A stretch of DNA of 64,000 nt from Octopus sinensis (GCF_006345805.1 NC_042997.1:131192001-131256000); one strand, 5' to 3'; shown: positions 4,190 through 62,387, numbered from the stretch's first letter. Notes: a model not told the origin generated them from the letters alone. Made by a program: numbers and translations.

Positions 4190-4619
4190 ATAATAATAAT
4201 TCCTTTTATTAACCAAAAGAGCATACGTGAGGATAACATATCAAGGACAGACAACACAATTTGTATGGGGATTTACATAAGGGTTGGGGAGAATAGAATA
4301 GAAAGGACAGTGAAATGCGATTATCGTTTTCCCTTCTGGCAGCCGAAGTTGATTCCTTTCCAGAAGGATCAGTAGTTATACAATCTCATTCCCCCTCTTG
4401 TGTTAACCTCTGCCCCTGCTCTAATGAAATATATACCTATATATGCATACACAAGTTCATATCTATTTCATTCCCTATTTACACCGTATTTCGTTTCATT
4501 TTTTCCTTATCAGTTTTCCTTCCCTTTTTTTCCCCATGAATACAATTTGTTACATGCCCAAATTTTAAGACGCGTCACATATCTTTGAGACTCAACAACG
4601 TTCTTCAGTAGTGCTTGCT

Positions 4620-4770
4620 GATGTTTTCTTTCTTTCTTTCTTTCTTCTTTCTGTCTTTCTTTCTTTCTTTCCTTCTTTCTTATTTTCTTTCTTTCTCTCT
4701 CTCGCTTTCTTTCTTTCTTTTTTCTCTCTCTCCCCCTCTCTCTTTCTCTTTCTCTCTCTCCCTCTCTTTT

Positions 4771-4801
<31 letters not shown>

Positions 4802-4842
4802 CTCTTTCTTTCTTTCTTTCCTTCTTTCTTTCTTTCTTTCCT

Positions 4843-12206: not shown

Positions 12207-12321
12207 TAGATATATGCACACATATATACATGATATATTTATATATCTATATATATATATATATAATATTATATATATATATATATAGACAGATAGATAT
12301 ATGCACCACATATATACATGC

Positions 12322-12371
<50 letters not shown>

Positions 12372-12471
12372 NNNNNNNNNNNNNNNNNNNNNNNNNNNNN
12401 NNNNNNNNNNNNNNNNNNNNNNNNNNNNNNNNNNNNNNNNNNNNNNNNNNNNNNNNNNNNNNNNNNNNNNN
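12372..12471. other. Assembly gap (100 N) following a (TA)n tract
   Basis: Run of N. Confidence 0.99.
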
Positions 12472-18533: not shown

Positions 18534-18570
<37 letters not shown>

Positions 18571-33517: not shown

Positions 33518-35199
33518 CTGGGAGTAGCTTACCAACAATGATAAAGCCATTTTAAAGGAGACAAACCTGATTAGATTGTATGTTGAGCAATAAATTGTCC
33601 GTTTTTTCTTTCGGATAGATTTGTGTGCTTGTTTATGTATGTGTGCATGTATGTATGCATGCATGTATGTATGTATGCGGGGGGAGGGGTGTCTAGAAAA
33701 AGAAAGAAAATAGAGAAGATATTTCTCTTCCATATTCTTTCCCTCCTTCATATAGGAAATTCAAGCTGGGAGAATAATTAAATGATTCTTCGGGGCTTTC
33801 TTATAAAGGCGAAGTTTCTTTGAACTAAATGAAATTTTAGAATTTAATTAATATTTCATCGTTTAATATTTAATAAGAAAAACAAAGAATCTACTCACCC
33901 GCCACCAAAAAAAAAAAAAAAAAAGAACCATTAATTTTTTTTCTTTATCGTTTATACGAAAAAAAAATTACATTCTGTTTTGAAGATTTAAGGAGAAAAT
34001 GATTAAACGCTATGTGGAACACTCAATTTATTTGAACTAAAGAGAAAGCCTCTAAACGGCCACTCGCTTTCCTAGAAATAACAACCAAATCTCCTTCAAA
34101 TCACATCCCGTGTTTTCAAAAAGTACACTAAAAATGTACAATATTTGGAATTGAATAAAAGAGAGGCTGGTTGCGAGTGAGACACTTCCGATCGTGGGTC
34201 TACCTTGGGGTTAAAAACTTGGAATTAAAAATAGCGGCAGCAGCAACAAAAAGTGTCTTTTTTTTTCAAAAAAATAAAAAGAACTCAGACGAATCCCTAA
34301 AAGCAAATCCATAAAAAAAAGAGGGGATGACTGGTTAGAACGTCTTTGAACAAATGTCTGCTCAATTAGGTCTAACCTAGGGTTAAATAATAGCAGCCAG
34401 CATGGGAACCTTTACATCGTTGTTGAACATGCTAGAAATAGCATCCAAACCATGATCGCAAGTTGTCTACTGTCTTAAAAAGAACACAAAGTACCGTCAT
34501 GGTTGGAAAGCCTTTAAATCACAGGTCTCCTTCATCAGCGTTGTCCTGGGACTGAACAATTCCAGCAACAATTAATTTATTTCAATAAATCAACCAATTA
34601 TTAATGGCTTAGTTGTTAGTAATTGATTTGATTGAGGTAAATTTGTCGGTGAGACGACATTGTAAGCAATTTCCCATTCCATTTTCTTGTCAGCGTTGGA
34701 GCGAATTCGTTTTATTTACATCAATCACATGTACCCTCGAGAAACATCACCGAGTTTTATTTCACTCATTATATCAGTCGACGAGAGAGGATTGGACAAT
34801 CTTTTTACTATTAGAAATGTATATCGGATAGTTTGGGAGTGTTTACGTGCTGAGAAGAAAAAAAAATCTCTAATTCTATAAATCCATTGGAATATCAACT
34901 TATATTAAATTACTGTTATGGTCTGAGATTTTACAGACTTCATTTGCGGCTGGTTTCAAATTTGAATGCAGGCGGAATGGTAGTAAAATCCTCCTAATGC
35001 AGAGCTTCGCAATCTTTTTTTTTTCTTTTAGTTCTCGACGCATTGGAGATTAAATAGAAATTACAGGCGTACTTAATATGGAAAGTTTTAAAAAATGAAC
35101 TATACATAAAAATTTAAAATCCATAAGCAGAAAAAGAAAATCAGAAAAAATATTGGCTATTTTGTTTTATTGCTTACTCTACAACCATTAATAATTCTT

Positions 35200-35790
35200 T
35201 CTACTATAGGCACAAGGCCTGAAATTTGGGGGAGAGGCATAGTCGATTACATCGACCCCAGTACTCGACTGGTACTTATTTTACTGACCCCAAAACAGAT
35301 GAAACGTAAAATCGACCTTGGCGGAATTTCATTTTAGATCGTAATGACAAACGAAATACTGTTAAGCATTTCGTCCGGCGTGCTAACGATTCTTATTTCT
35401 TTATTGCCCACAAGGGGCTAAACATAAAGGGGACAAAGGGATTAAGTCGATTATATCGACCCCAGCGCGTAACTGGTACTTATTTAATCAACCCCGAAAG
35501 GATGAAAGGCAGAGTCGACCTCGGCGGAATTTGAACTCAGAACGTAGCGGCAGACGAAATACCTATTTCTTTGCTACCCACAAAGGGCTAAACAAAGAGG
35601 GGACAAACAAGGACAGACAAACAGATTAAGTCGATTACATCGACCCCAGTGCGTAACTGGTACTTAATTTATCGACCCCGAAAGGATGAAAGGCAAAGTC
35701 GACCTTGGCGGAATTTGAACTCAGAACGTAGAGGCAGACGAAATACGGCTACGTATTTCGCCCGGCGTGCAAACGTTTCTGCCAGCTCAT
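35200..35790 (-). mobile_element. Nested or tandem array of three SINE units
   Basis: Tail GGGYARTAAAGAAAT joined to AGGTATTTCGTC (35565) and to AAGAATCGTTAGCAC (35395) inside the neighbouring SINE heads. Confidence 0.9.
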
Positions 35791-37099
35791 TGCTTTACCT
35801 CCGGCCATTAAAAATGGTTCCCAAAAGTCTTAAATATTACCTTAAAAAATCTCCAGAAGAAATAGTACATGCTGGACATTATTGTCCAAGTTATAATATG
35901 CCTGACAAATAGATACAAAATACAAGTTAAAAATAAAAAAATAAATGAAATAAAAACAAAACTGTCGTAGCTGAACTGCCTTTGACCGTAGGTCTCGGAG
36001 ATCAGTGCCACGCTGGAACTAGTCACTGGTCACCGCAGTCATGTCCACACATGGCCGCCGCGTAGGAGGTCCACTCGACGGCACTGTCCCCTCACTATTC
36101 AATGGTGCATTCTCAGATTTACTTCATTTTAGCATTAGTACAAATTAGTACCCACCCAGAATATTCTGAAGCCCCCCCCCCCCCGCCCCATACACCAAAA
36201 TCTGGCGACGGGCCTGTGTCTGCAGGATGCGGTGGAACACGCCATTTGTTCGGATGTATTCCCTACCGCCATATTTTGCTGCACACCCCACCACATTTTT
36301 TCTTTCTTTTTGTCTCCTTGTAATAAAATTGTGATTCTTTATGTAAATAAAACAAATTTTGATTAACAATGTAATAAATCAAAAAAAAAAAAGAAGAAAA
36401 GAAAAAGAAAGAAAAAAGAAAAGAAAAAACGAAAAATTGGAAAAAGTAGCACGCTGCTAAAATTGTCGTACTTATTTCACTAGACATCAACAATAGTCGG
36501 AAATGTGTCTTTGTAAGTCAACGTAATTGTTTTTTTCTTCCATCCTGCATGCATGCTTGCGATTTATGCTGATTTATTGTGGACATAGTTATTCATATAA
36601 GGCGTTGTCGTAGTATGGAAGGGGAAATGAGATTGTATGACATTCGTGTTTTTTTTTCCAGCAAGTAAGTCTAAATAAAATAACATGTTACAACCATTTT
36701 AAGTGAGAATGTCACGAGCCAACGCGGAAGCCTCAGAGTGGTCGTGCGATCTCTTAAAAAGCGAACCAAATCTCATTCGTGTCACTCAACCTCTGCAGCA
36801 GCGGTCCTCAGTTTTACTTCGTTTTACACTGGAGACAAAAGATATAAATTTACTGGTATGCTTCGTATGGAAAGTTTAAAATCATCGTTCCAGAGTATGA
36901 ACTATTGAAAATTATCAAGTTTTATTGATATTACGTAATAAAATTTTGAATCGTATATGTAGGCTTGACTATATAGTTAAGAAATTCACTTTGGGTCTAA
37001 TAGTACTGGGTTTGGTTCCACTGAGCGGTACCTCGAGCAAGTTTATTCTACTAAAAGCCGGGCAATAGCCCCGGAAAAACTGATTCTTTGTTTCTGACA

Positions 37100-37427
37100 A
37101 AGATACAAGGCTCCATCTTTGGGATGTAGTTAACACATGCAAATGCACATTTGGAACTTGAGAAAAGTCTTGCATATTTTTATTGTTCCACTCACAGATT
37201 GCACTTGTAATGTACGAATTAGCCAGTCGATTTCTCTCTCTGAAAATTCCAGTTTATCCAGATTCTCCTTTAAGCGTTTACTAACAAGACCTAGTGCTCC
37301 AATTATTATTGGTATGAATATGAATTCGTAGCCTGGATATAGAAGCTGGAGGTTTCGAAGCAGTTGTACATAGATATCCTCTTTTCCTTTGATTTTTCAA
37401 AGAGATATTTATATCTGCTGGGCAGTT
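37100..37427 (-). mobile_element. R4-type LINE 3' fragment, same family as 7361-8775
   Basis: Close match to 8390-8720 (CPADINISLK to KFQM* and UTR); 5' end abuts (TATG)n. Confidence 0.9.
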
Positions 37428-37585
37428 ATGTATGTATGTATGTATGTATGTATGTATGTATGTATGTATGTATGTATGTATGTATGTATGTATGTATGTA
37501 TGTATGTATGTATGTATGTATGTATGTATGTATGTATGTATGTATGTATGTATGTATGTATGTATGTATGTATGTATGTATGTAT
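37428..37585 (+). repeat. (TATG)n microsatellite
   Basis: Seen directly. Confidence 0.97.
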
Positions 37586-38717
37586 GGTTTGATATGACGT
37601 ATAGTAAATAATTCAATGCAATTCATTGGAGTAATTATTTTGGTAAAATTAAAGAAGTGAAACTGGAAGGTGTGCATACACTATTTGCATGTATGTATGT
37701 ATGTATGTATGTATGTATGTATGTACGTATGTGCACTTATATATTACAAACACATACACAGCCACACACACTCAAACACACACACACACGCACATATATG
37801 CATGCATACTTACATATATATATACCTACACACCACACACAATCATCTTATCTTCAGGAAACTATTATAGTTCTTCAGTTGATAACCATAATGACTTTTT
37901 TAGGAGGTGTGGGGGTGATTAAATATATATATCAACTATTACTTGAAAGAACGTGTTCACTATGCACGCTTTCTCCATAAGCACGCAAACACACACACGC
38001 ACGCATGCACACACACCGTCTCTCTCTCTCTCTCTCTCTCCCTTCATTTCTTCTCCCTCTCACACAAGCACGTTTTAAATACACAAACCCGTTACTCGGA
38101 AGAAGACTGCACCTTAAATAACATACTTTGATTCACACATGGACCTGTGTGCATGCGCATACGTATATGAGTGTGTTTGCGCATAATTAATGTGATGTGG
38201 TGTGTGTGTGTGTGTGTGTGTGTCTGTACAAACAGTGGTGGTGATGGTGGTGGTGAAATATGTGTAGACAATTCAATGCTGTATGTCTGATTAATTACTT
38301 AACAGAGAAGTTTTATTGCGAATAGTCTGACGCCACAGCGGGCAAGGGCTCTTCTTGTCGAAAGCTTTGCCTTTGAAGGTATGTACGTGTACGTTGTGTT
38401 CATGTACGTGTGTACATCTGGAGATAATATAACATATATACCACATCTACACGCATAATACATATATATACGACGTCAGAGAATAAATGCTATCTTGGTT
38501 TTTATCTCAGACGTTGATAGTTTTGCTAAATTAAGCAACACTGTGAGTTCGGAAGACACCCTTGTCCCACCATCACCGTCACACACATACAAGTAAAAAG
38601 ACCAAAACAAAACAATTTGGGAGACTAATGAGGGATCTTCTACGTGCTCGCTTGATCTACTAGAAATAGCAGCGAAATTTCCCTCAAACCACGCAGTAAA
38701 AATAATAAATGCGCCCT

Positions 38718-38955
38718 TTTAAAGCTTAGCCAGGCTCATAGGCCCGGTTTCCCGGTTTCAATGGCGTATGTGTTCCCCAGCTGGACGTGACGCCAGTCCA
38801 TCGAAGCGTTACTCATTTTTGCCAGCTGAGTGGACTGGAGCAACGTGAAATGAAGTGTTTTGCTCAAGAACACAACGCGTCGCCCGGTCCAGGAATCGAA
38901 ACCACAATCTTACGATTATGGTGCTGACACCCTAACCACTAAGCCACGCTCCTCC
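38718..38955 (-). mobile_element. tRNA-derived SINE (third family)
   Basis: Minus-strand head GGAGGAGCGTGGCTTAGTGGTTAGGG..GGTTTCGATTCC with A and B boxes. Confidence 0.75.
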
Positions 38956-39237
38956 ACCGAACCACACAATACCATTTTGAAAAAGAGAAGGACATTTTGA
39001 TGATGTAGTTCCTGAAAACATTCTCTGAAAAAAAAATGAGATGGTCTTGGCTGGAGCGCTTTAATCATAGGTCTGCTAGATCAGAGCTGATCTGCAAGTT
39101 AAACAACAACGACAATGTCGATACTAACAAACAAAACCAGCAGCAGAAGCAGCGGCAACAATGACAACGATGACGGAGCCGCCAACAGTAACTTCGCAAA
39201 CAGCAGCAATGGATGGAAGCACTCCGTCGGTTACAAC

Positions 39238-39572
39238 GACGAGGGTTCCGGTTGATCCGAATCAACGGAACAGCCTGCTCGTGAAATTAACGTGTAAGTG
39301 GCTGAGCACTCCACAGACACGTGTACCCTTAACGTAGTTCTCGGGGATATTCGGCGTGACACAGAGAGTGAAATACAGGTACAACAGAAACAGGAAGTAA
39401 GAGTGAGAGAAAGTTGTGGTGAAAGCAGGGATCACCACCATCCCCTGCCGGAGCCTCGTGGAGCTTTAGGTGTTTTCGCTCAATAAACACTCACAACGCC
39501 CGGTCTGGGAATCGAAACCGCGATCCTATGACCGCAAGTCCGCTGCCCTAACCACTGGGCCATTGCGCCTCC
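39238..39572 (-). mobile_element. tRNA-derived SINE (fourth family)
   Basis: Minus-strand head GGAGGCGCAATGGCCCAGTGGTTAGGGCAGCGGACT..GGTTTCGATTCCCAGACCGGGCG followed by about 260 bp of non-tRNA body. Confidence 0.75.
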
Positions 39573-39789
39573 AAACAGCAGCAATAACAACTACGTCAAC
39601 AATATCGGTTTCAAATTTTGGCACAAGTCCAGAAATTTTGGGTAGGGATTAAGTCAATTAATCCAGTGCTCGGCTGGTATTTATTTTATCCACCAAGAAA
39701 GGATGGGAGGCAAAGTCGACCTCAACGGAATTCCCGGCGCAGTAACGATTCTGACAGCTCGCCGACTTAGCAACACCATCACAATACCA

Positions 39790-40150
39790 ACAGCTGTATC
39801 ACATATGACTGGACTTGGGCTAAGAGAACAGGAGTTAAAGCAGCAAGCGAGCCCAGTATGCGAGCATATTCCACTTCCTGTTTCAATTAGTTTGCACATC
39901 ATGTCTGTTACAAGTAGATATCACTCAAATTGCAAAATCTTCCTTCGTCTCTACTTAATTTATTCCACTTCTGTTTCAATTAGTTTGCACATATGTCTGT
40001 TACAAGTAGATATCACTCAAATTGCAAAATCTTCCTTCGTCTCTACTTAATTTTATTTGCACCTTTCCCCCGGATTAAACAACTAACTCTGAATGGATTT
40101 TAGCATAAGTTCTGCCGCAAATGTCATCTACAAAGTATCAAGAAAAAGAC
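39790..40150 (-). mobile_element. Probable old CR1/L2 RT fragment containing a 94-bp tandem duplication
   Basis: FVDD, LFNPGK and RILG remnants in broken frames; near-identical duplication at 39867-39960 and 39961-40052. Confidence 0.4.
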
Positions 40151-40281
40151 ATATGAATGTATAACAGAAAAACAACATCGAAACATACAAATATATGAAG
40201 TTTGCGGTCACAGCTTCAATTCTTTTTACATGTTAAACAAATGGGCATATAAATGGGACGGAGTGTGCGCGCAATTATGTA

Positions 40282-40312
<31 letters not shown>

Positions 40313-40354
40313 ATGTATGTATGTACATATGTATGTATGTATGTATGTATGTAT

Positions 40355-40484
40355 CTTCTATTTTTAATTATTATAAATCTTCCATTGATGAGGGAACCGA
40401 TTTCCAACAAAAATACAAGGCTCCATTTTGGGGATGTAGTTAACACAAAGAAATACACATTTGGAACTTGAGAAAAGTATTGCA
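40355..40484 (-). mobile_element. R4-type LINE extreme 3' end in (TATG)n
   Basis: Matches 8645-8775; TATG repeats on both sides. Confidence 0.9.
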
Positions 40485-41213
40485 TGTATGTATTATTTTA
40501 TTTGTTTCAGTCATTTGATTGCGGCCATGCTGGAGCACCGCCTTTAGTCGAGCAAATCAACTCCAGGACTTATTCTTTGTAAGCCTAGTACTTATTCTAT
40601 CAGACTCTCTTGCCGAACCGCTAAGTTACGGGGACGTAAACACTCTAGCATCGGTTGTCAAGCGATGTTGGGGGACAAACACAGGCACACAAACATACAC
40701 ACACAGACAGACATACACACACACACACACACAACACACACACACATACATAACACACTGTGGGTTGTATTAGGTATGTATGTATGTAGTAATGTAATGT
40801 GTGTGTGTGTGTGTGTGTGTATATGTATGTATGTATGTATGTATGTGTTTGTGTGTATGATTAAATGTGTTTATGTGACGGCATATGATTTTGGCGGTTT
40901 CAATGGGGAAAGCAATGCTTGTCATCACCACTAATGAAGAAAACAAAGAAAGAATGGAGTGGGTAATTTCGAAGAACACATTTTTCATGCAGAATTTAAG
41001 CGAGCTGCATGAAAGCGCTTCGCCAATGTAGTGAATGCGAACCACAGATGTAGAGTATAAATTTTGTCTTAGGACACCATGTTCTTAATGGTCAGTGATG
41101 GTCTTCCTCGTTTACGGGTGGAAAGCTATCAAGTAATATACGTACGTAAGAACATATAACATAAATATGAGTTTATCGTAATTCCTTTTTCTCTTTATCT
41201 GTATATTATTTAC

Positions 41214-41706
<493 letters not shown>

Positions 41707-42109
41707 TGTGTATGTATGCGTGTGTGCGCGCGCACAGCTGTACACATATGCTTGTGTATGTATGCTTAAATAGATATGTAGATGTTTATATAGGTATGCA
41801 CCAAAGTATGTGCATATATGTATAAGTGTATATGTGGGTGTATGTATACACACACACGTATGCATACATAAATGCATATATGTAGACATCTGCATGTGGA
41901 TACACATGTTTTCGTTCATGTACGTGCTTGCCTATATTTTTGTGTATCACTGTATACACACAGACACACATATACAATGTATGTGCGTATCAACGTATGT
42001 ATATTAACGACTATTTATATGCGCATGTACATATTCATGCATGTGCATATAACCACACGCGCACGTTTATGTATAACCAAGTATGTATGTGTTTGTTACA
42101 TATCCTTTC

Positions 42110-42902
42110 TCCTATAGGTACAAGACTCGAAATTTGAGGAGGTGGACTAGTGAATATTCAACTGGTATTTCTTTTATCAATCCCGAATGAAAGGCAAGTG
42201 GACCTCAACGTAATTTGAAATCCGGACTCAAAAGTCGGATGAAACGCCGCTGAGCATTTTATCTCGGGTGCTAACGATTGTGTCAGCTCGCAGCCATTGT
42301 ACTTGTTATATATACTGATATATATTTTCTACTCTAAGCACAAGGCCCGAAATTTTTGGGAAGGGGGCCAGTCGATTAGATCAACCCCAGTACGTAACTG
42401 GTACTTAATTTATCGACCCTGAAATGATGAAAGGTAAAGTCGACCTCGGCGGAATTTGAACTCAGAACATAAAGACAGACGAAATACCTATTTCTTTACT
42501 ACCCACAAGGGCTAAACACAGAGAGGACAAACAAGGACCCAGTGCGTAACTGGTACTTATTTAATCGACCTAGAAAGGATGAAAGGCAAAGTCAACCTCG
42601 GCGGAATTTGAACTCAGAACGTAACGGCAGACGAAATACCGCTAAGCATTTCGCCCGGCGTGCTAACGTTTCTTATTTCTTTACTGCCCACAAGGGGCTA
42701 AACACAGAGAAGACAAACAAAGACAGACAAAATGATTAATTCGATTACAACGACCCCACTATGTAACCGGTACTTAATTTATCGACCCCGAAAGGATGAA
42801 AGGCAAAGTCGACCTCAGCGGAATTTGAACTCAGAACGTAAAGACAGACGAAATAACGCTAAGCACTTCACCCGGCGTGCTAACGTTTCTGCCAGCTCGC
42901 CC
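42110..42902 (-). mobile_element. Tandem or nested array of four SINE units
   Basis: Tail-into-head junctions at 42490 (AGGTATTTCG) and 42675 (AAGAAACGTTAGCAC). Confidence 0.9.
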
Positions 42903-43237
42903 TCATATATATACTGATATATTGATGAAGGACTCTATGTAAGTCTGTATACTTATTCGTACGTTTGTATGCACTCATGCAGGCGCGCGTGCGTACGTCA
43001 GGCAGTGAACTGGCAAAGTCATTAGAGCGTCGGATAGAATACCTTGCGGTTATGTTCCGGCTCTTTACTCTCTGACGGCAACGCCTATGACACCATATTG
43101 GCCTCGGCTTACTCTTGGAAAATATCGGTGAGGTCGGGATCAGAGACTTGCATGCATGGCCAACTGCTGCTCTTCCATGAAACCATTATCAAGGCCTGCG
43201 CCTTGGAGAGGAAATATCCGCTACAGATTCAGTCTCA

Positions 43238-43384
<147 letters not shown>

Positions 43385-44202
43385 CTACAGACAGACATAC
43401 ATACTTTTATGTATGAGTATGAATATGTCTATGTAGATATATACGTGTACACAGTTATGTGTGTGTGTGTCTATGTGGGTCTATGTGTATGTGTCTATGT
43501 GGGTCTATGTCTGTGTGGGTCTATGTGTGTGTGTCTATGTGGGTCCATGTGTGTGTGTCTATGTGGGTCTGTGTGAGTGTGTCTATGTGGGTCTCTGTGT
43601 GTGTGTCTATGTGGATCTCTGTGTGTGTGTGTGTGTCTATGTAGATCTGTGTGTGTGTGTCTATGTGGGTCTGTGTGCGTGTCTATGTGGGTCTGTATGT
43701 GCGTGTCTGTGTGTATGTGAGTGTGTATTTATTTATGTCTATGTCTGTCTGTCTCTCTGCCTATCTATTGTGTTTGTATGTGTGTGTTTGTGTATGTGAA
43801 TATGTATGCCATTTCCATTGATTACTTGGATTCCTCCTTTAAGGAAGGAGTTGGTTTCTAACAAAGTCCCATTGCTGGGAGCTTATGCATAAAAGTGTAT
43901 GCAACCCAATTTTTCTCCTTTGCCTGAAAATCTTAACTTTTGCAGATTGTCGCTAGCCAAACGTACAATGATTATTGGAATATAAGTGAATTCACTCCCA
44001 GAGTGCATATGCTGTATGCTTCGAAGCAGTCGTCCTTTTCCTTCTTGTTCATATGGAAGAAAGGTTCACATCTTCTGGACAGCTGACTTCTATTATTGCG
44101 TACGAATTTTCTTTCCTGTCTCAAATAACTATTATCAGGCCTATAATGTTTGCACTCGGCTCCACTTTTGATGAGATTGCTTCACTGATATGTATGTATT
44201 TG

Positions 44203-44246
<44 letters not shown>

Positions 44247-44444
44247 GCTTCCAACCAGGACTTTCGCGTGTGTCTTTATTTCTCTATCACTATATATGTT
44301 TCCCATTCTCTACCCGTATCTCTCCAATGCTCACTCTTGGGCTACCCATTTTTTATCCCCTTTCTTCCCTCTTTCAATCAATCCCAATCCCCAACACTTT
44401 TATCTGAATGTTACACGCGCACAATATATATAATATATATATCT

Positions 44445-44493
<49 letters not shown>

Positions 44494-44530
44494 TATATAC
44501 ATATTATATATATAATAATATATATAATAC

Positions 44531-44575
<45 letters not shown>

Positions 44576-44576
44576 T

Positions 44577-44622
<46 letters not shown>

Positions 44623-44800
44623 CTATAACACACCACACACATATTATATATATATATATAATATATACACCACACACACACATATATATATATATAATAT
44701 ATATATATTATAAATAATGAGGGAGATAAATTATATTATTTTGATCGTTGATGATATATTTCTAGCATATGGCCGACTACCTAGCAGTCTTGCCCTGCCA

Positions 44801-44851
<51 letters not shown>

Positions 44852-44951
44852 CACATACATATTGTATAAAAGATCGTGGATAAGGCCAAAACAATGCGAA
44901 GTAAATGCAAGGTAAATCACCAGAAAACAAATATGTGAATTACCTTGTATT

Positions 44952-45051
44952 CAATATTTTGGTGTTATGACCCCCTTTTCAAGAAATTGACGTATGATAC
45001 CGGCAACATTCGTCAATTTCTTGAAAAGGAGGTCGTAACCCCGATATATTG
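44952..45051. repeat. 41-bp-arm hairpin; each arm is a hammerhead-like motif with a U3-A8 core
   Basis: Arms 44952-44992 and 45011-45051; consensus TTC-TTGAAAA-G-GGGGT[CRTA]ACCCC-GAAA-TA-T-T-GAAT. Confidence 0.6.
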
Positions 45052-45342
45052 ATTTAAATAACTGCTCATTCAGTTATATATATTGATTTAAATAACTCTT
45101 TAGTATTATATACTATAAAATATCAAAGTTTCGTCGCACGTCTATAACCAAGAAATATATAACATTTTACTGGGTCTCAAAATTGTGTGAATGAGGAAAC
45201 TTTGTGACATTTGCCAGTAGTTGATATTATGAAGGAATAAACGAAATTGAATATAACTGTTTTATATGTTTTATCGTTTTTAAATGTTTACTGTGATTCT
45301 TTCGCAGCGTAATATTTCAGTCTCAACTCAATCTCAGAAACC

Positions 45343-45770
45343 GATTTCTTTACTACCCACAAGGGGCTAAACACAGAGGGGACAAACAAGGACAGACAAA
45401 CGGATTAAGTCGATTACATCGACCCCAGTGCGTAACTGGTACTTATTTGATCGACCCCGAAAGGATGAAAGGCAAAGTCGACCTCGGCGGAATTTGAACT
45501 CAGAACGTAGAGGCAGACGAAATACTGCTAAGCATTTCGCTCGGCGTGCTAACGTTTCTGCCAGCGATCACCTTGTTTCCCAATATCGGTTTCAAGTTTT
45601 GGCTCAAGGCAAGAAGTTCGGGTGAGGGATTAAGTCGATTTCGTCAACCCTAGTTCTCATTCAACTGGTACTTATTTTATGGACCCCGAAAGGACAAAAG
45701 GTAAAGTCGGCCTCGGCGGAATTTGAACTCATAACATAAAGACGGACGATTCTGCCAGGTCGCTGCCTTG
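45343..45770 (-). mobile_element. Two adjacent SINEs (long-tail and short-tail types)
   Basis: Central domain present twice; long tail at 45343-45405. Confidence 0.85.
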
Positions 45771-48153
45771 TGTCCCAATATTGTTATCATTAATAACTTG
45801 TCATTCACAGACAAACTAACAACATTTCGCACGGCATAAGCTTCACTGTTCGCTCTTCATCATTCAGCCACCAACGAATTAGATACTGCAGGTTTTATCT
45901 CGTTTGTTTTCACGGTTGATTACTTGGTTCAATGTCTGCTCTAATGCGATCAGTAATCTCCAAACCCCACAAAATCTATTTTTTAGCTTTTATTTTTATG
46001 AAATTTTGCTTTGCTTTGTTAGCAAATTATTTGAATATTAATTCTTCAGCTTAGCTCTAAGCAGCATATCATATGTTTACTGGGCGAGCTATAAATGCTA
46101 TTAAAACCGCAATCTGTTGAACGTAAAGCAAAATACGATAGAAATATATGAGTTTCAATTGTTGGTACCAGGCCAGCAATATCGGGGGAAAGGGTAAGTC
46201 AATTACATCGATTCCAGTGCTTAACTGGTACTTATTTCATCGACCCCGAAAGGATGAATGGCAAAGTAGATCTTGGTGGAATTTGAACCCAGAAAGCAAA
46301 GACGGTCGAAATGCCGCTAAACATTTTACCAGGGGTGTTAATGATTCTGGCAGCTCCGCTATCTTACAGCAGAAATACATTCGCACACGAAAAGGAACAG
46401 AATTTTCTTTCTGATATTTGTGACTGTAAAAGTTATTATCGTTAAATATATCTATTCTTTAATTCTTTCAATGGTTCAGTCGTAGGACTACGGACATACT
46501 GGAATACCACCTTAATTTTCTTTCAATTTTGTTGCTGCTTTATGGCTGGAATTTGGTTTATAACTAAGTTTGTAGCAACTGATTTTCCCTGAGTATATCT
46601 TTTAATAAATAGTTGGCTGGTCCGAGATCATTGTTAGGAGCTTATTCAATATTTCATCAGAGGCCCCTTTCATATTTCTGATGCCAAGAATTTTGGAGAA
46701 ATATACTTGATCGTATCGACCTAAGAACTTGACTAGTATTCTATGGTCATGGCTAGAACGTCTTTGATAGTAAGCCTGTTTTATTGTTTGATGATAGTTG
46801 ACTTCAGTGTCGTAACTGGACTACTCTAAACACATCCCTGCTACGCTATGAGTTGACTTGGAGTTAAACAACAACAGCATTTCAGACTTCCAGTCTATGC
46901 ACTACAAGACACTATCTGTTCTGTCTTCTTGTACTGTCTTAGCTATGCACTTAATATTACACCATCTGTGTTTACTTTTCAAGAGAATAACAGACCCGAG
47001 TCAAGGAAAATTGACATCGATAGACTAAACCAATGTTTCTCATAGAATGGGCAAAATCCGATGCATGAAGGGGGCCGTGAGGATTGAAAATGGAGTAGAC
47101 AAATTGTCATTCTTTTATTTTTTAAATTCTTTTACTCGTTGCAGTCACTGGACTGTGACCATGCTGGGGCAACACATTGAAATGATTTAATTGGACAAAT
47201 CGACTCAAGTAATTATTTTTTTGAAAAGTTTATTCTATTGGTCTCTTTTGCCGAATTGCTAGTTGCATGAACGTAAACAAACCAATACCAGTTATCAAGT
47301 AGTGTGAGGACCAGCACACACACACACTCTCTCTCTCTCTCTCTCACACACGCCCACACACACACACACACACACATTATCTTCGCAATTATAGTACATG
47401 CATTGCAATGTGATTTGATAGGGGTTATAGTTAGGCGCAGTACGTCTGAAATAGTAAAAAAGGGGTAACATAAAACTGAATTCTGGATTTCAGCAGCCCG
47501 TTTTAGAGGGCATACAGTTTCGATCAACTATGTCATCTCTGTACACAATCATTATCATCATCACCATCATAATCATCACCGTCGACATCAGCATCATCGT
47601 CATCATTATCGTTATCCTTCCTCTTCTCTTCACCATAGTCACATCAACATCGCCACCACTTCCGTCGCCACCATCCTCGCCGAATTTAGAACATAAAAAC
47701 GGACGAAATGCCGCTAAGCATATTGTGAGGCGTGCTAACAATTCTGCCAGATCCGCCGCCTTAATAATAACGACAATAATTTCGGGTCTTACTCCGCAGT
47801 TATTTAACAATTTTGACAGAATCAACTGAACATCATGCTCACAAGGGATAATGTTGCTTAAGAGGTCAACCATATCAGATAATGAATTTTCCCTTCAGTA
47901 TTCAGTAACATCACGGGCTTTCCTAATCTCACTTTATCTGACTTAAAAAGAAAAGAGAAACGAAAGACAAGCGCAAAACAAATCGAAAGAAGATTTTTTC
48001 TTCAGTTGGAAACTACTTTTTTTAAAATTCGGAATGAAGAAGCAATTACTTGACATATTTTGATCTACTAAAATGCTTTTTGTATTAAAAGTTTCGGTCC
48101 ATTCTTTAAGAATTTCTGTAAAAAAATAATTACGTCTGTCACACTACAATTCT

Positions 48154-48438
48154 TATTTCTTTATTGCCCACAAGAGGGGACAAACAAGGACAGACAAACG
48201 GATTAAATCAATTACATCGACCCCAGTGTGTAACTGGTACTTAATTTATCGACCCCGAAAAGATGAAAGGTAAAGTCGACCTCGGCGGAATTTGAACTCA
48301 GAACATAACGGCAGACGAAATACCGATAAGCATTTAAAATATCTTACTCAAGAACACAATACAGCCTGGTCCAAGAATCGAACTCATTGCCTCATGATTG
48401 TATGCCCGACGCTCTAGCCACTGAGCAATGCGCTTTAC
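48154..48438 (-). mobile_element. Chimeric SINE insertion with a perfect 16-bp TSD
   Basis: GTCACACTACAATTCT at 48138-48153 and 48439-48454; the insert is the tRNA head of one SINE family fused to the body and long tail of another. Confidence 0.85.
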
Positions 48439-48706
48439 GTCACACTACAATTCTACTTTTAAAGATGATTTTATTTATTTTAGTGTTTTCTACTTTACGC
48501 AATGGCGGTGGATTGGCAGAATTGTAGAACGTCGGAGATCTTTTTTTTTCTGCTTCAATATGTCCTCAGCTCAAATCCCACTGAAATCATCTTTGATCTT
48601 CATCCCTCCGAGATCGATTAAATGAACTACCAGTCAAGCACTGCGGTTAATTTCTTTGAGACCTTTTGCCGATTCAAAAAAAAAAATCAATATTTTATAC
48701 GACCTT

Positions 48707-49154
48707 TGGTGGCGAGCTGGCAGAAACGTTAGTACTCCGGGCGAAATGCGTAGCCGTATTTCGTCTGCCGTTACGTTCTGAGTTCAAATTCCGCCGAGGT
48801 CGACTTTGCCTTTCATCCTTTCGGAGTCGATTAAATAAGTACCAGTTACGCACTGGGGTCGATGTAATCGACTTAAACCGTTTGTCTGCCCTTGTTTGTC
48901 CACTCTATGTTTAGCCTCTTGTGGGTAGTAAAGAAACAAGCATTTCGTCTGCCGCTACGTTCTGAGTTCAAATTCCGCCGAGGTCGACTTTGCCTTTCAT
49001 CTTTTTGGGGTTGATTAAATAAGTACCAGTTACGCACTGGGGTCGATGTAATCGACTTAATCCATTTGTCTGTCCTTGTTTCTCCCCTCTGTGTTTAGCC
49101 CCTTGTGGGTAGTAAAGAAATAGGTGGCGAGCTGGCAAAATCGTCAGCACGCCG
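48707..49154 (+). mobile_element. Tandem long-tail SINE array
   Basis: Two long-tail units plus the start of a third head (49123-49154), which is interrupted by the ORF1 element. Confidence 0.9.
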
Positions 49155-50792
49155 TGTTTGATGCTTCGTGTTTTTTTCCGTCTGTATAAGTTGAATGGTT
49201 AAAGGCTATATTTGTTTTTGTTTAATTGTTTTGGATTTTTGCTGTTCGCAGCGGTGGTGTTTTTGAAAAATGGCAAGGAGGAACAGGTATTCTGACCTCA
49301 GTGAGTCGGACCTGTCGACTTCGGAGGATGACTGGCGAGAGCGGTCAACAGGCTAGATATGGCGTTAGAAGGGAAAATGAATTACGCAGGAGTAATGAAG
49401 GCAACAAGCAAAAAGGTTGACCGGCAAAAGGTTACCAGACGGCCAAAAATGGGTGAAGAAGGTAGGCGATGACGTGGAGTTGTCTCCGCCAAGGAAAACA
49501 ATAAAAAATTTTGAAAGGAATACCATAACGTACAAGGTGTTTGCAACAGATAAAAGAAAAATGGAAACAGTTGGAATAGAAACCGTGGAGGAGGCATTAC
49601 GAACAACAGCAGAAAAAATAATATTCCTGACAAGAGGGAATAAGTTCGGTACTGTCGTTGTACAGTTCGAATCAGAGGCAGTCGCTAGGAGGATGGCAGC
49701 AAGGACTATCAAGACAGAAAAAGTAGACCTTCTGCCCTCGTATCCGGGAAGGAAGACGTCCAGAATCAGGGTGGAAGGAATCCCACCCGACATAGAAGCT
49801 GAATGCGTAGTGGCAGCCATCGTCATTGATAATGAGGATAAGGTGAACATACTAAAGGCCACAATTACGGATGAAGGCAACTGGAAAGGAGGAGTATTAG
49901 AGATGAGCGTCCAAGTGGAAACTGAAGTTCTGGAACGCTTAACAGAAGTAATCACGATGGGAGACATAAGTCTACGAGTATGGGTGGAGGGCAGAGCTCC
50001 TCGATGTTTTAAATGTGCCCTGAAAGGCCACATAAGAGCTAACTGCCCTCCACCAGTGAAGGAACCAACGAAGGAGCCCGTGGAAGATATAGAAGGTACC
50101 CGCAAGAGGAACAGAGGGAGGCAGAGGAGGAAAAGAGGGAAGATCAAGCAGAATGGAAAACCAATGGTAAAAGGAAGAAGAGAAAAAGAAAGAAGGCAAG
50201 TTATAATGAACCTCAATCCACCCCAGCACCACCCACGCCCCTCTTCGTCCCACACTTCCCCTGCAGACACAAAACCTACCCACTCCCCACCAACAAGAAA
50301 AAAAAAAGCAGGCACACAGAACAACTTACAAAATTCCCCTCCCGTAATGCCCGTTATAGGTTTATTGGACGAGGAAGACGAGGACCTGCTGGAAATATTG
50401 AGGGACTGGGGTGAAGTTGAATTGCTGGATAGTTGGGATGAGGAGGGTTGTATGGAGGTGCTTTTAACGGGGAAACAAGTGCAAGAACTTGAAAATGAAC
50501 TGAACAATGTTTTTGCGTTAATAAGAAAGGATATAGCCCCGGACTGGAAAAAAACTAGAAAAACGGTACGGGGTGAAAATATGGGATTATGTATTGTTCG
50601 GAAGATTTTAAGAAGAGGACATAGGAAAAGAGGACAGATAAGCGATGTTATCTGATGGGGCAGGTAACATCACTTTCATCGTTCATTTTCACCCTCTCAT
50701 TTTTATCATACGTTTGTTTTTGTATTTTTATTGTCCCCAATGTGTTGTTTGTTTCTTATCTTCGTCAGCCCGTCCTGGGTAATAAAGAAATT
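49155..50792 (+). mobile_element. ORF1-only non-LTR retroelement (HAL1-like, L1/Tx1-type)
   Basis: Splits a SINE head; TSD AAAATCGTCAGCACGCCG (49137-49154) and AGAATCGTTAGCACGCCG (50793-50810); single ORF1; 137-bp 3' UTR ending GGGTAATAAAGAAAT; no ORF2. Confidence 0.8.
49270..50655 (+). CDS. LINE ORF1p-like nucleic-acid-binding protein (about 461 aa after repairing two compensating frameshifts; 412 codons open from 49417)
   Basis: NYAGVMK (SYAxV-like) motif; RRM-like TVVVQFES; RIRVEGIPPDI; LRVWVEGRAPR-CFKCALKGHIRANC (CX2CX4HX4C, 50005-50046); basic linker; acidic C-terminal segment. ATG 49270 is in frame with 49417, with a shifted segment at about 49350-49415. Confidence 0.8.
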
Positions 50793-50982
50793 AGAATCGT
50801 TAGCACGCCGGGCAAAATGCCTAACGCTATTTCGTCCGTCTTTCTGCTACGAGTTCAAACTCTGTCGAGGTCGACTTAGCTTTTCATCCTTTTCGCGTTG
50901 CTAAAATAAGTACCAGTTGAATACAGGGATCGATATAATAGACTTACCTCTTCCCCTAGTACAAAAAGATTCAAACCAATAT
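50793..50982 (+). mobile_element. Downstream half of the host SINE interrupted by the ORF1 element
   Basis: Continues the head (GAATCGTTAGCACGCCGGGC), B-box, central domain and short tail. Confidence 0.85.
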
Positions 50983-52858
50983 TTTATACGGTCTTTTACC
51001 TAAGCGGGCCGTGTTCGATTCTCGGAATGGAAACGCTACAATTTTAGGCGCAGGAATGGCATGACATGGCTGAGATTAATCACTTGATTTCTGGTTTAGT
51101 TCCACTACACTGCACTTTGAGCGCGTACATTTTGCTCTAGCCCCGGGCTGATTAAGGCCTTGCAAGTGAATTTCATTGACAGGAACTTTGGAAGCTCGTC
51201 GTGTGTGTGTGTGTGTGTTACGCGTGTGTGTCCCCGTTTCACCGCTTGACATCCTCTGTTGGGTTGTTTGCATCCCCGTAATCCAGCGGTTTAGCAAAAG
51301 TCATTGATAAAATAAGCACAAGATTTTTTTTTTTAAATAAGCACTAGGGTTGATATATTCTACATTATTCTTTTATTCGTTTATACGTTCCAGCCCTAAA
51401 GCTGTGCCCATGCTGGAGCACCAAAATTTGAAAAAAAATGTTTTTTTGTTTTTAGGCGGTAAGTTACGATTTGATGGCAGTTTAGTTGCTATTTCTAATG
51501 TGTAGGGCGTCTCTGAAGTGGCTCGATAATTGGCTCAAGTCTTTATTTCCACAACTGTGTCATAAAACGATGTTAACCTTGTTAGCTCACTCCTCTATGA
51601 TTATTTAACCATCAACGTTTGGTTCTCTTTTATTATCCAGTTCATTTTAATAGACATTTCGTCGTCTGCGTGTTTGTCTGTCTGACTATCTCACTGTCTC
51701 TACCCCTCTCTCCCTTTTCTCTCTCAAATTTCCCTCTCTCCAACACATTCTCACCGCCTTTTATTATTATTATTATTATTATTATTTTGCTTTGTTCTTC
51801 GTCGGTAATAAAATCCGGTGTTTGTATGCTTATGTCAGTGTGAACATAAAATGGAAAGCCAAAAAAAAAAAAAAAAATCCGTTATTTTCAATCAAACGCA
51901 AAAGCGTGTTTGCGAATGCCGGGAGAAACGAGACTTTCGGAAACTGAAGATAACTTTGAAAATTACCAGGCCGATTCCACCACCACCACCACCACCATCA
52001 GCCAACCCGAACTTTCACCCCTCCCCTACTATGTACAACTTGGGGGAGTTTGCAGTGCTCTAATTATTCCGACGTTTACCACCAGTCTCTCTTTCTCTCT
52101 GTCTTTCTGTCGCCCCTCTCTCCCCTTCTCTCTCACACACATACTCACATGCACAAACACACACACACACACACATATATATATACATACATATATATAC
52201 ACACACACACACGTATACACACACACACACATACACATATATATATATTATATGTATACATATACACACACCTCTGTTTTGTAGTGTTATGTTAGCTTAC
52301 TCGGCATGTTAAACTGCTGAAGAAGAAAAAAAAAAAGAAAACTAGAAAAGCAGCACGTACCCCACCTATCACACCCCCAACACATATAACTCTAATAAAG
52401 TAAAAACAAAACAACAAACCAAACAAACAAACCAACAACAAGAAAACACATCAGTTAACAGTCGTCCTCTCTGCTTCAGGCTCCTAATTCTAAAAGGGAG
52501 ATACCCTGACACCCTTATTTCGCTCATATATACATATACCATGACTTCTGTTCAGGTGCTGCACGTTAGCAACGACTTGCTAGGCCAAAACTGAGTTACA
52601 CTGGGGATATTTAATTACAAAAACAAAAGGATAAAAAAAAAAGAGACTGTGTGTGACGCCTGGATTTGATCTTACAATCCTCTTATATATTGTTTACGTT
52701 TGTAAAAAATTAAATTTTCTTTTATATTGCCTTCGATAATTATGCCGGGTTGGAAACCAAACTGTTTCCGGACTTCTATAAACGAAGGTAAGTCAATTAA
52801 CATTTTCTAAACGCAGAATATTAAATAATGTATACGTACATACATACGTACACATACA

Positions 52859-62345: not shown

Positions 62346-62378
<33 letters not shown>

Positions 62379-62387
<9 letters not shown>

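What the first reader, a model, noticed from the sequence alone, without database searches (positions are those of the whole stretch)
35200..50810. Long-tail SINE repeatedly inserts into its own family's head, building arrays
I read ten AAAGAAA(T/C) tail junctions, at about 40, 35395, 35565, 42490, 42675, 45343, 48153, 48937, 49121 and 50792. Seven continue into another SINE head at a few recurring positions (AGAATCGTTAG/AGAAACGTTAG, GGTATTTCG/AGCATTTCG, GGTGGCGAG). The unique-sequence target at 48153 (AGAATTGTAG) resembles the preferred site. This implies a sequence-preferring endonuclease using abundant SINEs as landing pads and explains the arrays at 35.2, 42.1, 45.3 and 48.7 kb.
Basis: partly seen in the sequence, partly recalled or inferred. 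Interest (0 to 1): 0.7.

Follow-up and report, generated by a model that had tools for sequence, protein, structure and literature searches.

The report
Octopus SINEs landing in SINE heads
In this octopus genome window, one young family of short retrotransposons (and a LINE-derived element with the same tail) sits again and again at three fixed spots in the 5' heads of other copies. This builds head-to-tail arrays, most likely because its partner enzyme prefers a short DNA motif that those heads carry.

Summary
The window (Octopus vulgaris/sinensis complex) holds exactly ten 'long tails' (...GGGTAGTAAAGAAAT). Seven run directly into a same-strand SINE head, at only three positions: about 15 (AGAAWCG), about 48-55 (GGTATTTCG) and 1. 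Chance expectation is 0.8% per tail (P = 2e-13). Other tail types never do this (0/19 against 7/12).

One 'tail' (50791) belongs not to a SINE but to a 1.64-kb ORF1-only LINE derivative. It lies inside a SINE head with an 18-19-nt duplication of head positions 10-29, both here and at an independent O. sinensis locus.

Verified targets outside sense heads begin with the same 4-mers (AGAA, GGTA). Downstream S/X units are 13-24% diverged against a median of about 6.5% for long-tail units. Both points favour successive, motif-preferring insertion.

The simple nested picture fails, however. No long-tail SINE inside an array has its own duplication or an orphan head piece. Single duplications flank whole arrays. 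So either the 5' end is resolved by homology with the host head, or some arrays are one-event template-jump chimeras, of which one clear example exists at 48.15-48.45 kb. DNA tandem duplication is excluded.

A close precedent exists (Tx1-Mar/SINEU-3), so this is a new variant of a known kind.

The parts
1..38 (+). 3' end of a long-tail (L) SINE cut by the window edge. The tail is followed by AGGTATTGGAC, which is non-SINE sequence.
35565..35803 (-). Array A35 unit 1: full-length L SINE of subfamily La (GATAAATTAAG). Its tail ends at 35565.
35395..35564 (-). Array A35 unit 2: L SINE (Lb) starting at head site B (AGGTATTTCG). It has a 14-nt internal tail deletion.
35197..35394 (-). Array A35 unit 3: old short-tail (S) SINE starting at head site A (AAGAATCGTTAGC). 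It is 17% from the S consensus.
35805..35815 (-). Upstream copy of the direct repeat ATTTTTAATGG. With ATTATTAATGG at 35185-35195 it flanks the whole A35 array (10/11 match).
42675..42903 (-). Array A42 unit 1: full-length L-tail SINE with an S-like body (GTCTGTCTTTACG). It is 10.9% from the L consensus.
42490..42674 (-). Array A42 unit 2: L SINE (Lb) starting at site A (AAGAAACGTTAGC). It has a 31-nt internal deletion and is about 2% diverged.
42326..42489 (-). Array A42 unit 3: short-tail SINE starting at site B (AGGTATTTCG).
42906..42922 (-). Perfect 17-nt direct repeat ATATATCAGTATATATA. Its second copy at 42307-42323 makes it flank the whole three-unit A42 array.
45344..45573 (-). Solitary-looking full-length L SINE. 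Its tail runs into non-SINE sequence (CGGTTTCTGAG) and no TSD was found.
45587..45769 (-). Older ATATT-tail (X) SINE with an internal deletion. It is flanked by the 12-nt TSD ATATTGGGAMAC (45770-45781 and 45575-45586), which directly abuts the L copy's head.
48154..48337 (-). L SINE from position 33 to the tail. It forms the 3' part of a chimeric retrocopy.
48338..48438 (-). 5' 100 nt or so of an unrelated tRNA-like SINE family ('SINE-Y', full copy near 38700-38950). It is fused to L position 33. The chimera is flanked by the 16-nt TSD AGAATTGTAGTGTGAC (48439-48454 and 48138-48153).
48504..48694 (+). Very old X-type SINE. Its tail (…AAATCAATATT) is followed by TTATACGACCTTT (48695-48707).
48709..48937 (+). 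Array A48b unit 1: full-length L SINE.
48938..49121 (+). Array A48b unit 2: L SINE starting at site B (AAGCATTTCG).
49122..49154 (+). Head positions 1-29 of host X-type SINE 'H'. Its last 16-18 nt (AATCGTCAGCACGCCG, 49139-49154) are repeated at 50795-50810.
49155..50791 (+). ORF1-only LINE derivative ('ELT'). It starts TGTTTGATGCTTCG and carries a gag-like ORF with a CCHC knuckle (49271/49417-50655, frameshifted near its start). Its 3' UTR ends ...CCTGGGTAATAAAGAAAT, the long tail.
50792..50983 (+). Remainder of host SINE 'H', from head site A (TAGAATCGTTAGC) to its ATATT tail. It is 24% from the X consensus. TTATACGGTCTTT follows at 50984-50996 and matches 48695-48707.

Best explanation
The long-tail SINE and the ORF1-only element share a 3' tail, so they are presumably mobilised by one LINE partner, which is not in the window.

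That machinery starts target-primed reverse transcription preferentially at nicks just 5' of AGAA(T/A) or GGTA(T/C)/GGTG. The SINE head carries one of each: AGAAWCGTTAGC at about 15, GGTATTTCG at about 48, GGTGGCG at 1. Old and new SINE heads, including the family's own, therefore act as landing pads, always in the same orientation. Repeated hits stack units head-to-tail.

When the incoming copy has no homology to the host (the ORF1 element), the product is a textbook nested insertion with an 18-19-nt duplication of head positions 10-29. When the incoming copy is itself a SINE, I infer a different 5' join. The free upstream host-head strand anneals in register to the homologous new cDNA and primes second-strand synthesis. 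The 5' junction then becomes invisible: no orphan head and no recognisable TSD. The host's original TSD ends up flanking the whole array.

Shown: the junction positions, their specificity to the long tail, the verified targets, the nested ORF1 element, and the age difference between units.

Inferred: that the preference resides in the endonuclease, and the homology-assisted 5' join.
For: - Enrichment and tail specificity: 7/10 tails in sense heads against 0.8% expected (P = 2e-13). Long tails enter internal head positions in 7/12 cases against 0/19 for S/X tails (Fisher 3e-4)..
- Independent DNA targets outside sense heads begin with the same 4-mers as the head sites. These are the TSD AGAATTGTAGTGTGAC at 48138-48153 and 48439-48454, the TSD GGTAC for the antisense insertion at L001 6001-6163, and GGTATTGG after the tail at 38. 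AGAA and GGTA each occur once in the roughly 75-nt head, so coincidence for both site classes is about 1e-3 (my estimate).
- The full tail is retained at every junction, so microhomology with the tail does not explain the motif.
- The ORF1 element lies in a SINE head with duplicated positions 10-29, in the window (49139-49154 / 50795-50810) and in O. sinensis L001 (19 nt, 18/19 identical). The host SINEs have different tail types, and the A/T variant at position 19 agrees within each locus.
- Ages: downstream S/X units are 13-24% from their consensus, like solitary S/X copies (13-34%). L units are 2.5-11%, median about 6.5%.
- Outer TSDs pair the first unit's 5' flank with the last unit's 3' flank, as expected if they belong to the original host.
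- Precedent for a LINE/SINE pair sharing a preferred target inside another transposon and forming tandem copies by sequential insertion: PMC4494074.
Against: - No L SINE inside an array shows its own TSD or an orphan host-head piece. The in-register join that explains this is inferred, not observed.
- In A42 the head of unit 2 (positions 15-47) is pure L type with no private changes, although the model derives it from the S-type host.
- In A42 unit 1 (10.9%) is more diverged than unit 2 (about 2%), which reverses the predicted order.
- A35 unit 1 carries A19 where the host has T19.
- The RT of this system demonstrably makes one-event chimeras (48154-48438).
- The duplicated 10-29 around the ORF1 element could instead be a head piece that belongs to that element family's own 5' end. 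Only two copies were available.
- The sample is 12 tails from 85 kb, and subfamily consensuses rest on 5-11 copies.
Confidence: 0.5

Rival explanations
1. One-event template jumping. Reverse transcription starts on the downstream-most SINE RNA at an ordinary target. The RT leaves that template inside the head and lands on the 3' end of a long-tail SINE RNA, sometimes repeatedly. The concatenated cDNA is then integrated once, so a single TSD flanks the array. This is the same kind of product as U6/L1-type chimeric retrocopies.
For: - Significant direct repeats flank only whole arrays: 17/17 at A42, 11/13 plus shared ATATT at A48b, 10/11 at A35. No unit has its own.
- First units are full length and later units are 5'-truncated.
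- Each unit is internally of one subfamily type, for example the pure L head of A42 unit 2.
- A clear one-event chimera, SINE-Y[1 to about 100] + L[33-tail], lies within one 16-nt TSD.
Against: - Jump points would have to coincide with the 4-mers that start verified DNA targets.
- The only truncated L copies outside sense heads start at 33 and about 64-72, not at 15 or 48.
- S/X units in A35 and A48b are 17-24% diverged against 5-7% for co-array L units, which demands old, decayed template RNAs.
- The acceptor is always a long-tail RNA even when priming began on an S/X RNA.
- It does not explain the overlapping head pieces on both sides of the ORF1 element, unless that element carries a head fragment of its own.
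Confidence: 0.3
2. Re-mobilised composites. An array arose once, was transcribed through (the tail has no T4 terminator), and the multi-unit RNA was retrotransposed as a unit. The similar junctions at different loci would then be copies by descent.
For: - Identical junction strings AAAGAAATAGGTATTTCGTCTG at 35565 and 42490.
- The first units of A35 and A48b share CGTAGCC, and their second units share GCTACG and GGGGTTGATT.
- A whole-array TSD fits this model.
Against: - Pairwise distances are star-like. A35 unit 1 against A48b unit 1 is 21/226, and unit 2 against unit 2 is 13/170, no closer than to unrelated copies.
- The arrays differ in unit order, subfamily and downstream partner.
- The shared sites include CpG transitions.
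Confidence: 0.07
3. Tethering to the Pol III transcription complex. The integration machinery would be drawn to SINE 5' ends by bound TFIIIB/TFIIIC, as for yeast Ty3 or Dictyostelium TRE elements, rather than by DNA sequence.
For: - All junctions lie at or within about 50 nt of SINE 5' ends and in one orientation.
- S/X SINEs also pile up exactly one TSD upstream of other SINE heads.
Against: - Verified targets with the same 4-mers exist where there is no sense SINE head (48138-48153; L001 6163, inside an antisense SINE body).
- Many hosts are old, decayed copies that are unlikely to bind TFIIIC.
- The positions are exact to the nucleotide.
Confidence: 0.05
4. DNA-level tandem duplication or unequal crossing-over, or insertion of 5'-truncated copies into the tail of an existing copy.
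For: The arrangement is head-to-tail with no spacer and no internal TSDs.
Against: - Adjacent units are 9-11% apart, no closer than random pairs. They belong to different subfamilies (La, Lb, S, X) and start at different positions.
- Downstream S/X units are older than upstream L units, which is the wrong order for tail-targeted additions.
Confidence: 0.03

Closest known systems
Tx1-Mar LINEs and SINEU-3 in crocodilians (Kojima 2015, PMC4494074); more broadly, target-preferring Tx1-clade LINEs (Tx1L in Tx1D, Keno in U2 genes, Kibi/Koshi in microsatellites)
   Same: A LINE lineage and its SINE share a preferred target inside another interspersed repeat. They make TSDs of about 16 nt, and tandem SINE copies arise by sequential insertion. 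Here a LINE-derived ORF1 element and the long-tail SINE share tail and target, with TSDs of 16-19 nt. L1-Tx1 LINEs are reported as recently active in O. vulgaris (PMC13282606).
   Different: - The target lies in SINE heads, including the inserting family's own head, so each insertion creates a new target.
- The preference is partial: 4 of 12 tails lie elsewhere.
- SINE-in-SINE events show no sandwiched TSD.
- The clade of the partner LINE is unknown, because no ORF2 was found.
Template-switch chimeric retrocopies (U6/L1, U3/L1, 5S/L1; Buzdin and colleagues; recent survey bioRxiv 10.1101/2025.02.02.635956, listed but not read here)
   Same: A full-length copy of one small RNA is joined to a 5'-truncated retroelement, and the whole is flanked by one TSD. 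This is exactly the anatomy of 48154-48438 and, formally, of the arrays.
   Different: The truncation points recur at three head positions that match DNA target motifs. In two arrays the parts differ strongly in age. Up to three or four units are chained.
Chimeric L1 formation, in which nascent cDNA anneals to a homologous genomic element (Gilbert et al. 2002 and Symer et al. 2002, recalled from memory, not checked here)
   Same: It gives a precedent for resolving the 5' end of a new insertion by homology with a resident copy, which the in-register model requires.
   Different: In those cases the resident copy lies at a distance and the intervening DNA is deleted. Here the homologous sequence is the target itself, and the outcome is a partial tandem repeat.
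HAL1, the 'half-a-LINE' elements of mammals (from memory)
   Same: A LINE derivative that keeps ORF1 and the 3' end but lacks ORF2, like the 1.64-kb element at 49155-50791.
   Different: It is an unrelated lineage. The octopus element has a CCHC-knuckle ORF1 and a stringent-type tail shared with a SINE.
SINE-derived satellites in squamates (PMC10702118, listed but not read in detail)
   Same: Both link interspersed SINEs to tandem arrays.
   Different: Those are long homogeneous DNA-amplified arrays of SINE portions. Here the arrays are short (2-4 units), heterogeneous and made by retrotransposition.

Membership tests
tRNA-derived SINE (SINE2) | Head recognisably derived from a tRNA | tested here: not met
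   ARAGORN finds no tRNA-like gene in the window. Rfam finds no tRNA match at E up to 1 in 48400-51200. The head folds as a long imperfect hairpin.
tRNA-derived SINE (SINE2) | Internal Pol III promoter boxes A and B | tested here: inconclusive
   By eye, GAGTTCAAATTCC resembles box B (GGTTCGANNCC). TGGCAGAAAC matches box A only partly. No transcription data are available.
SINE in general (non-autonomous, LINE-dependent retroposon) | Short, many dispersed copies, flanked by TSDs, with a 3' tail shared with a LINE-type element | tested here: met
   There are 23 copies with heads in 64 kb. TSDs are 5-19 nt. The last 60 nt or so of the tail are shared with the ORF1 element's 3' UTR.
Target-specific or target-preferring LINE/SINE pair (Tx1-Mar/SINEU-3 type) | LINE-type element and SINE insert at the same sequence | tested here: met
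   The ORF1 element lies at head site A in the window and in L001. L SINEs lie at site A at 35395 and 42675.
Target-specific or target-preferring LINE/SINE pair (Tx1-Mar/SINEU-3 type) | Reproducible TSD of the target at each insertion | tested here: inconclusive
   Met for the ORF1 element (head positions 10-29, twice) and for 48153 (16 nt). Not visible for any SINE-in-SINE junction.
Target-specific or target-preferring LINE/SINE pair (Tx1-Mar/SINEU-3 type) | Nearly all copies in the target | tested here: not met
   Four of 12 long tails lie outside sense SINE heads. This is a preference, not strict specificity.
Target-specific or target-preferring LINE/SINE pair (Tx1-Mar/SINEU-3 type) | Partner RT/endonuclease belongs to a clade with target-specific members (Tx1, R1, R4 and others) | not testable with these tools
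   No ORF2 with this tail occurs in the window, L001 or L002. The ORF1 has a single database homologue, only a sub-threshold zf-CCHC Pfam hit, and no informative PDB relative.
Template-switch chimeric retrocopy | One TSD around a 5' full-length RNA copy joined to a 5'-truncated retroelement | tested here: met
   Met at 48154-48438. Formally also met by A35, A42 and A48b.
Template-switch chimeric retrocopy | All parts inserted at the same time, so equally diverged | tested here: not met
   A35: 7.4% / 6.5% / 17.3%. A48b: 6.6% / 4.9% / 24.5%. The caveat is that consensuses come from few copies and source RNAs may already have been diverged.
Tandem duplication / satellite | Neighbouring units most similar to each other, in the same register | tested here: not met
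   Adjacent units differ by 18/170, 19/185 and 16/184, like unrelated pairs. Their registers and subfamilies also differ.

The most novel reading that the evidence does not exclude
A SINE/LINE system whose integration machinery recognises a motif in the SINE family's own head, so that every insertion makes a fresh landing pad. Its 5' ends are resolved by homology with the host head, giving TSD-less, in-register arrays. This would be a retrotransposition-driven route from dispersed SINE to tandem array, and a way for a very abundant element (SINEs are 11.6% of the O. vulgaris genome) to keep inserting into 'safe' DNA.
Probability: 0.35. Interest if true: 0.65.

Novelty: new variant of a known kind. 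Interest (0 to 1): 0.5.

Why it matters
Octopus genomes are unusually rich in SINEs, and their expansion has been tied to genome reorganisation.

- A partner LINE that prefers SINE heads would explain SINE clustering.
- It would reduce the harm of new insertions by steering them into existing repeats.
- It would generate mosaic subfamilies and short arrays.
- It would bias repeat annotation, because apparently '5'-truncated' copies are really interrupted hosts.
- It offers a tractable natural case for asking how the 5' end of a target-primed insertion is resolved when the target is homologous to the incoming cDNA.

If the arrays are instead template-jump products, the system is a rich source of multi-unit chimeras for studying RT template switching.

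Tried and rejected
- **More octopus loci through proteins.** The ORF1 query gave one homologue (O. sinensis, locus L001). The DDE-transposase ORF gave the O. vulgaris ortholog of window 14160-34726 (L002). That locus stops 500 bp short of the first array and shows no SINE presence/absence difference. The LINE endonuclease ORF gave nothing. All three searches are spent, so no orthologous empty or filled site could be examined for any array.
- **Exact-pattern scans.** The tail pattern was scanned in metagenome and prokaryotic genome collections. There were 17 hits, and none contained the SINE; they are chance matches.
- **Partner LINE in the window.** The only LINE fragment (62546-63812, minus strand) ends in a poly(A)/(TA)n tail and is unrelated. 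No further ORF1-element copies were found.
- **tRNA origin of the head.** Neither ARAGORN nor Rfam supports it.
- **RNA structure as a cause of RT stops.** Site B lies at the loop/3'-arm boundary of the head hairpin, not at a stem base, and the fold z-score is only -1.3. This gave no support.
- **Dimer-as-unit propagation and tandem duplication.** Both were rejected on pairwise distances.
- **Microhomology between tail and target.** This was rejected as the cause of the motif, because the full tail is retained at every junction.
- **Literature.** Searches found no description of octopus SINE arrays.

Full report
**What the window is.** It is AT-rich eukaryotic DNA packed with copies of one SINE superfamily that shares a head and body of about 165 nt (...GAGTTCAAATTCCGCCGAGGTCGAC...). 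nhmmer with a model built from four copies finds 23 copies with head sequence in 64 kb. The species is an octopus. A 430-aa DDE-transposase ORF is 99% identical to an O. vulgaris protein, and the O. vulgaris locus fetched with it (L002) aligns to window 14160-34726 at 96-99%. The only homologue of the 412-aa ORF at 49417-50655 is an O. sinensis protein, whose locus is L001.

**Tail types.** Three tail types sit on the common body:
- L, 'long': ...CTTAATCCGTTTGTCTGTCCTTGTTTGTCCCCTCTGTGTTTAGCCCCTTGTGGGTAGTAAAGAAAT(A).
- S, 'short': ...GGCCTTGTGCCTAGAGTAGAAAAG.
- X: ...GGCCTTGTGCCAAAATTTGAAACCAATATT.

L copies are 2.5-11% from their consensus, with a median of about 6.5%. S copies are 13-28% and X copies 14-34%. 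L is therefore the young family. Its level matches the SINE+LINE burst at JC 0.065 reported for O. vulgaris (PMC13282606).

**The observation.** Seven continue without spacer into a same-strand head, at three positions only:
- Site A, position about 15: ...AAAGAAAT(A/T)|AGAA(T/A)CGTTAGC, at 35395, 42675 and 50791.
- Position 1, GGTGGCGAG: 49121.

Sense heads occupy 0.8% of oriented positions, giving P = 2e-13. With the two L tails of L001 added, 7 of 12 L tails enter internal head positions, against 0 of about 19 S/X tails (Fisher 3e-4).

**What the arrays are not.** They are not DNA tandem duplications. Adjacent units differ by 9-11%, no less than any two L copies. They belong to different subfamilies (La with GATAAATTAAG, Lb with GATTAAATAAG, S, X) and start in different registers. 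They are not a dimer family copied as a unit either, because the distances are star-like. Truncated copies were not added behind existing tails, because the downstream S/X units are the older ones.

**A new piece: the ORF1 element.** The 'tail' at 50791 ends a 1.64-kb element (49155-50791). It carries a gag-like ORF with a CCHC knuckle, has no ORF2, and has a 3' UTR that converges on the L tail. A second copy, 86% identical, lies in L001.

In both loci the element is preceded by SINE head positions 1-29 and followed by a SINE that resumes at position 10-12. Positions 10-29 are therefore present on both sides:
- Window: AATCGTCAGCACGCCG / AATCGTTAGCACGCCG.
- L001: CAGAAACGTTAGCACGCCG / CAGAAATGTTAGCACGCCG.

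The two host SINEs have different tails (X in the window, S in L001). The A/T variant at position 19 agrees within each locus but differs between loci. In L001 the host's own 17-nt TSD (ATTAT(T)TATTGTTTCACA) encloses the whole. The simplest reading is two independent nested insertions at the same head site, each with an 18-19-nt TSD. The caveat is that, with only two copies, I cannot exclude that the head piece belongs to the element family's 5' end.

**Verified targets elsewhere.**
- The L copy at 48154-48337 is flanked, together with a fused 5' part of another SINE, by the 16-nt TSD AGAATTGTAGTGTGAC.
- In L001 a 5'-truncated L copy (6001-6163) splits an antisense SINE, with the TSD GGTAC. 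This starts like site B.
- The tail at 38 is followed by GGTATTGG.

AGAA and GGTA each occur once in the head, so their coincidence with the two internal junction classes is unlikely by chance, about 1e-3 by my estimate. The complete tail (AAAGAAAT, usually plus A) is kept at every junction. The motif is therefore not a by-product of tail-target microhomology. It behaves like a cleavage or priming preference on DNA.

A systematic flank comparison against 3000 random window pairs finds significant direct repeats only around the following:
- Whole arrays: A42, 17/17, at 42906-42922 and 42307-42323.
- A48b plus the host: TTATACGRYCTTT at 48695-48707 and 50984-50996.
- A35: 10/11, at 35805-35815 and 35185-35195.
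- The 48.15-48.45 kb chimera, the ORF1 element, and the X copy at 45.6 kb.

No L SINE inside an array has a TSD of its own, and no orphan head piece precedes any full-length unit. Simple nested insertion predicts both.

Two explanations remain.
- (a) The upstream host-head strand, freed by the staggered cut seen for the ORF1 element (positions 10-29), anneals in register to the homologous cDNA and primes the second strand. The product is host[1-29] + L[30-tail] + host[10-end], which looks exactly like 'full copy + truncated copy' inside the host's TSD.
- (b) The arrays are single-event products of RT template jumping between SINE RNAs.

**Weighing (a) against (b).**
- For (a): the match between DNA targets and junction sites, the tail specificity, the nested ORF1 element, and the ages. 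In A35 the units are 7.4 / 6.5 / 17.3% diverged. In A48b they are 6.6 / 4.9 / 24.5%. The downstream units are as old as solitary S/X copies.
- For (b): the chimera at 48154-48438. There the first 100 nt or so of an independent SINE family, which has a full copy near 38700-38950, is joined to L position 33 inside one TSD. This shows that the RT does jump.
- Also for (b): array A42. Unit 2's head (15-47) is pure L type with no private change, where (a) predicts host S type. Unit 1 (10.9%) is older-looking than unit 2 (about 2%).

I therefore put (a) at about 0.5 and (b) at about 0.3, and I think both processes probably contribute. Tethering to Pol III factors is a minor rival. It is suggested by a separate pattern, in which S/X SINEs repeatedly sit exactly one TSD upstream of another SINE head in a TSD-SINE-TSD-SINE-TSD arrangement (L001 9405-11500 and 18000-18470; window 45575-45781). 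The verified targets outside heads argue against it for the L tail.

**Comparison with what is known.** The nearest precedent is Kojima's crocodilian system (PMC4494074). There, Tx1-Mar LINEs and SINEU-3 share a preferred target within a Mariner family, make a 16-nt TSD, and form tandem SINE copies by sequential insertion. The octopus case has the same logic, with three differences:
- The target is in SINE heads, including the inserting family's own head.
- The preference is partial.
- SINE-in-SINE junctions lack a sandwiched TSD.

L1-Tx1 LINEs are among the recently active clades in O. vulgaris. The partner here could not be identified, so clade membership is untested. The alternative anatomy matches U6/L1-type template-switch chimeras.

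I rate the finding a new variant of a known kind, with interest 0.5. The decisive test could not be run with the collections on hand. It is a comparison of orthologous loci across octopus species for intermediate array states, together with a genome-wide target logo.

Noticed in passing
window 49155-50791 (+); L001 9465-11055: A 1.64-kb ORF1-only LINE derivative ('half-LINE'). Its gag-like ORF has a CCHC knuckle, it has no ORF2, and its tail is shared with the long-tail SINE. The window copy has a frameshift or stop just after the ATG at 49271, while the L001 copy reads through. Only one protein homologue exists in the 5.8-billion-protein database.
   Followed up: partly
L001 9405-11500 and 18000-18470; window 45575-45781 and 48684-48708: Short-tail and ATATT-tail SINEs repeatedly sit exactly one TSD upstream of another SINE's 5' end, in a TSD-SINE-TSD-SINE-TSD arrangement. 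The units are of different subfamilies, so the same target was re-used. The TSDs begin ATTATT or ATATT, like the tail ends.
   Followed up: partly
window 48154-48454 (-): A one-event chimeric retrocopy. The 5' 100 nt or so of a different tRNA-like SINE family is fused to long-tail SINE position 33, and the whole is flanked by the 16-nt TSD AGAATTGTAGTGTGAC.
   Followed up: yes
window about 38700-38950 (-), also about 39590-39640 and 51000-51150: Copies of a second SINE family with a clearer tRNA-like head (GGCTTAGTGGTTAGGG...GGTTTCGATTCCTGGACC) and a body containing GTGTTCTTGAGCAA.
   Followed up: no
L002 (O. vulgaris) reverse-complement coordinates 4600-4830, against window 18537-18568: A perfect palindrome (foldback/MITE-like) of about 230 nt sits inside a (TA)n microsatellite in O. 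vulgaris and is absent from the window. It is the only large indel in 20 kb of orthologous sequence.
   Followed up: no
window 23652-24944 (-): A 430-aa open reading frame of a pogo/Tigger-like DDE transposase. It is 99% identical to an O. vulgaris 'hypothetical protein', and relatives carry Pfam DDE_1 (PF03184).
   Followed up: partly
window 62546-63812 (-): A LINE fragment with an apurinic-type endonuclease domain (PF14529) joined to a C-terminal ORF2 piece. The RT region is missing, and the fragment ends in a poly(A)/(TA)n tail near 62360-62400. It is unrelated to the long tail.
   Followed up: partly
SINE consensus positions 31-60 (e.g. window 48739-48768): The head contains an imperfect inverted repeat (GGGCGAAATGCT / GGTATTTCGTCT) that forms the top of a long hairpin. 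Insertion site B lies exactly at the loop/3'-arm boundary.
   Followed up: partly
window about 12250-12400: A run of N (an assembly gap), which shows as X in ORF translations. Microsatellites (TA, CA, TATG-type) are very abundant throughout the window.
   Followed up: no
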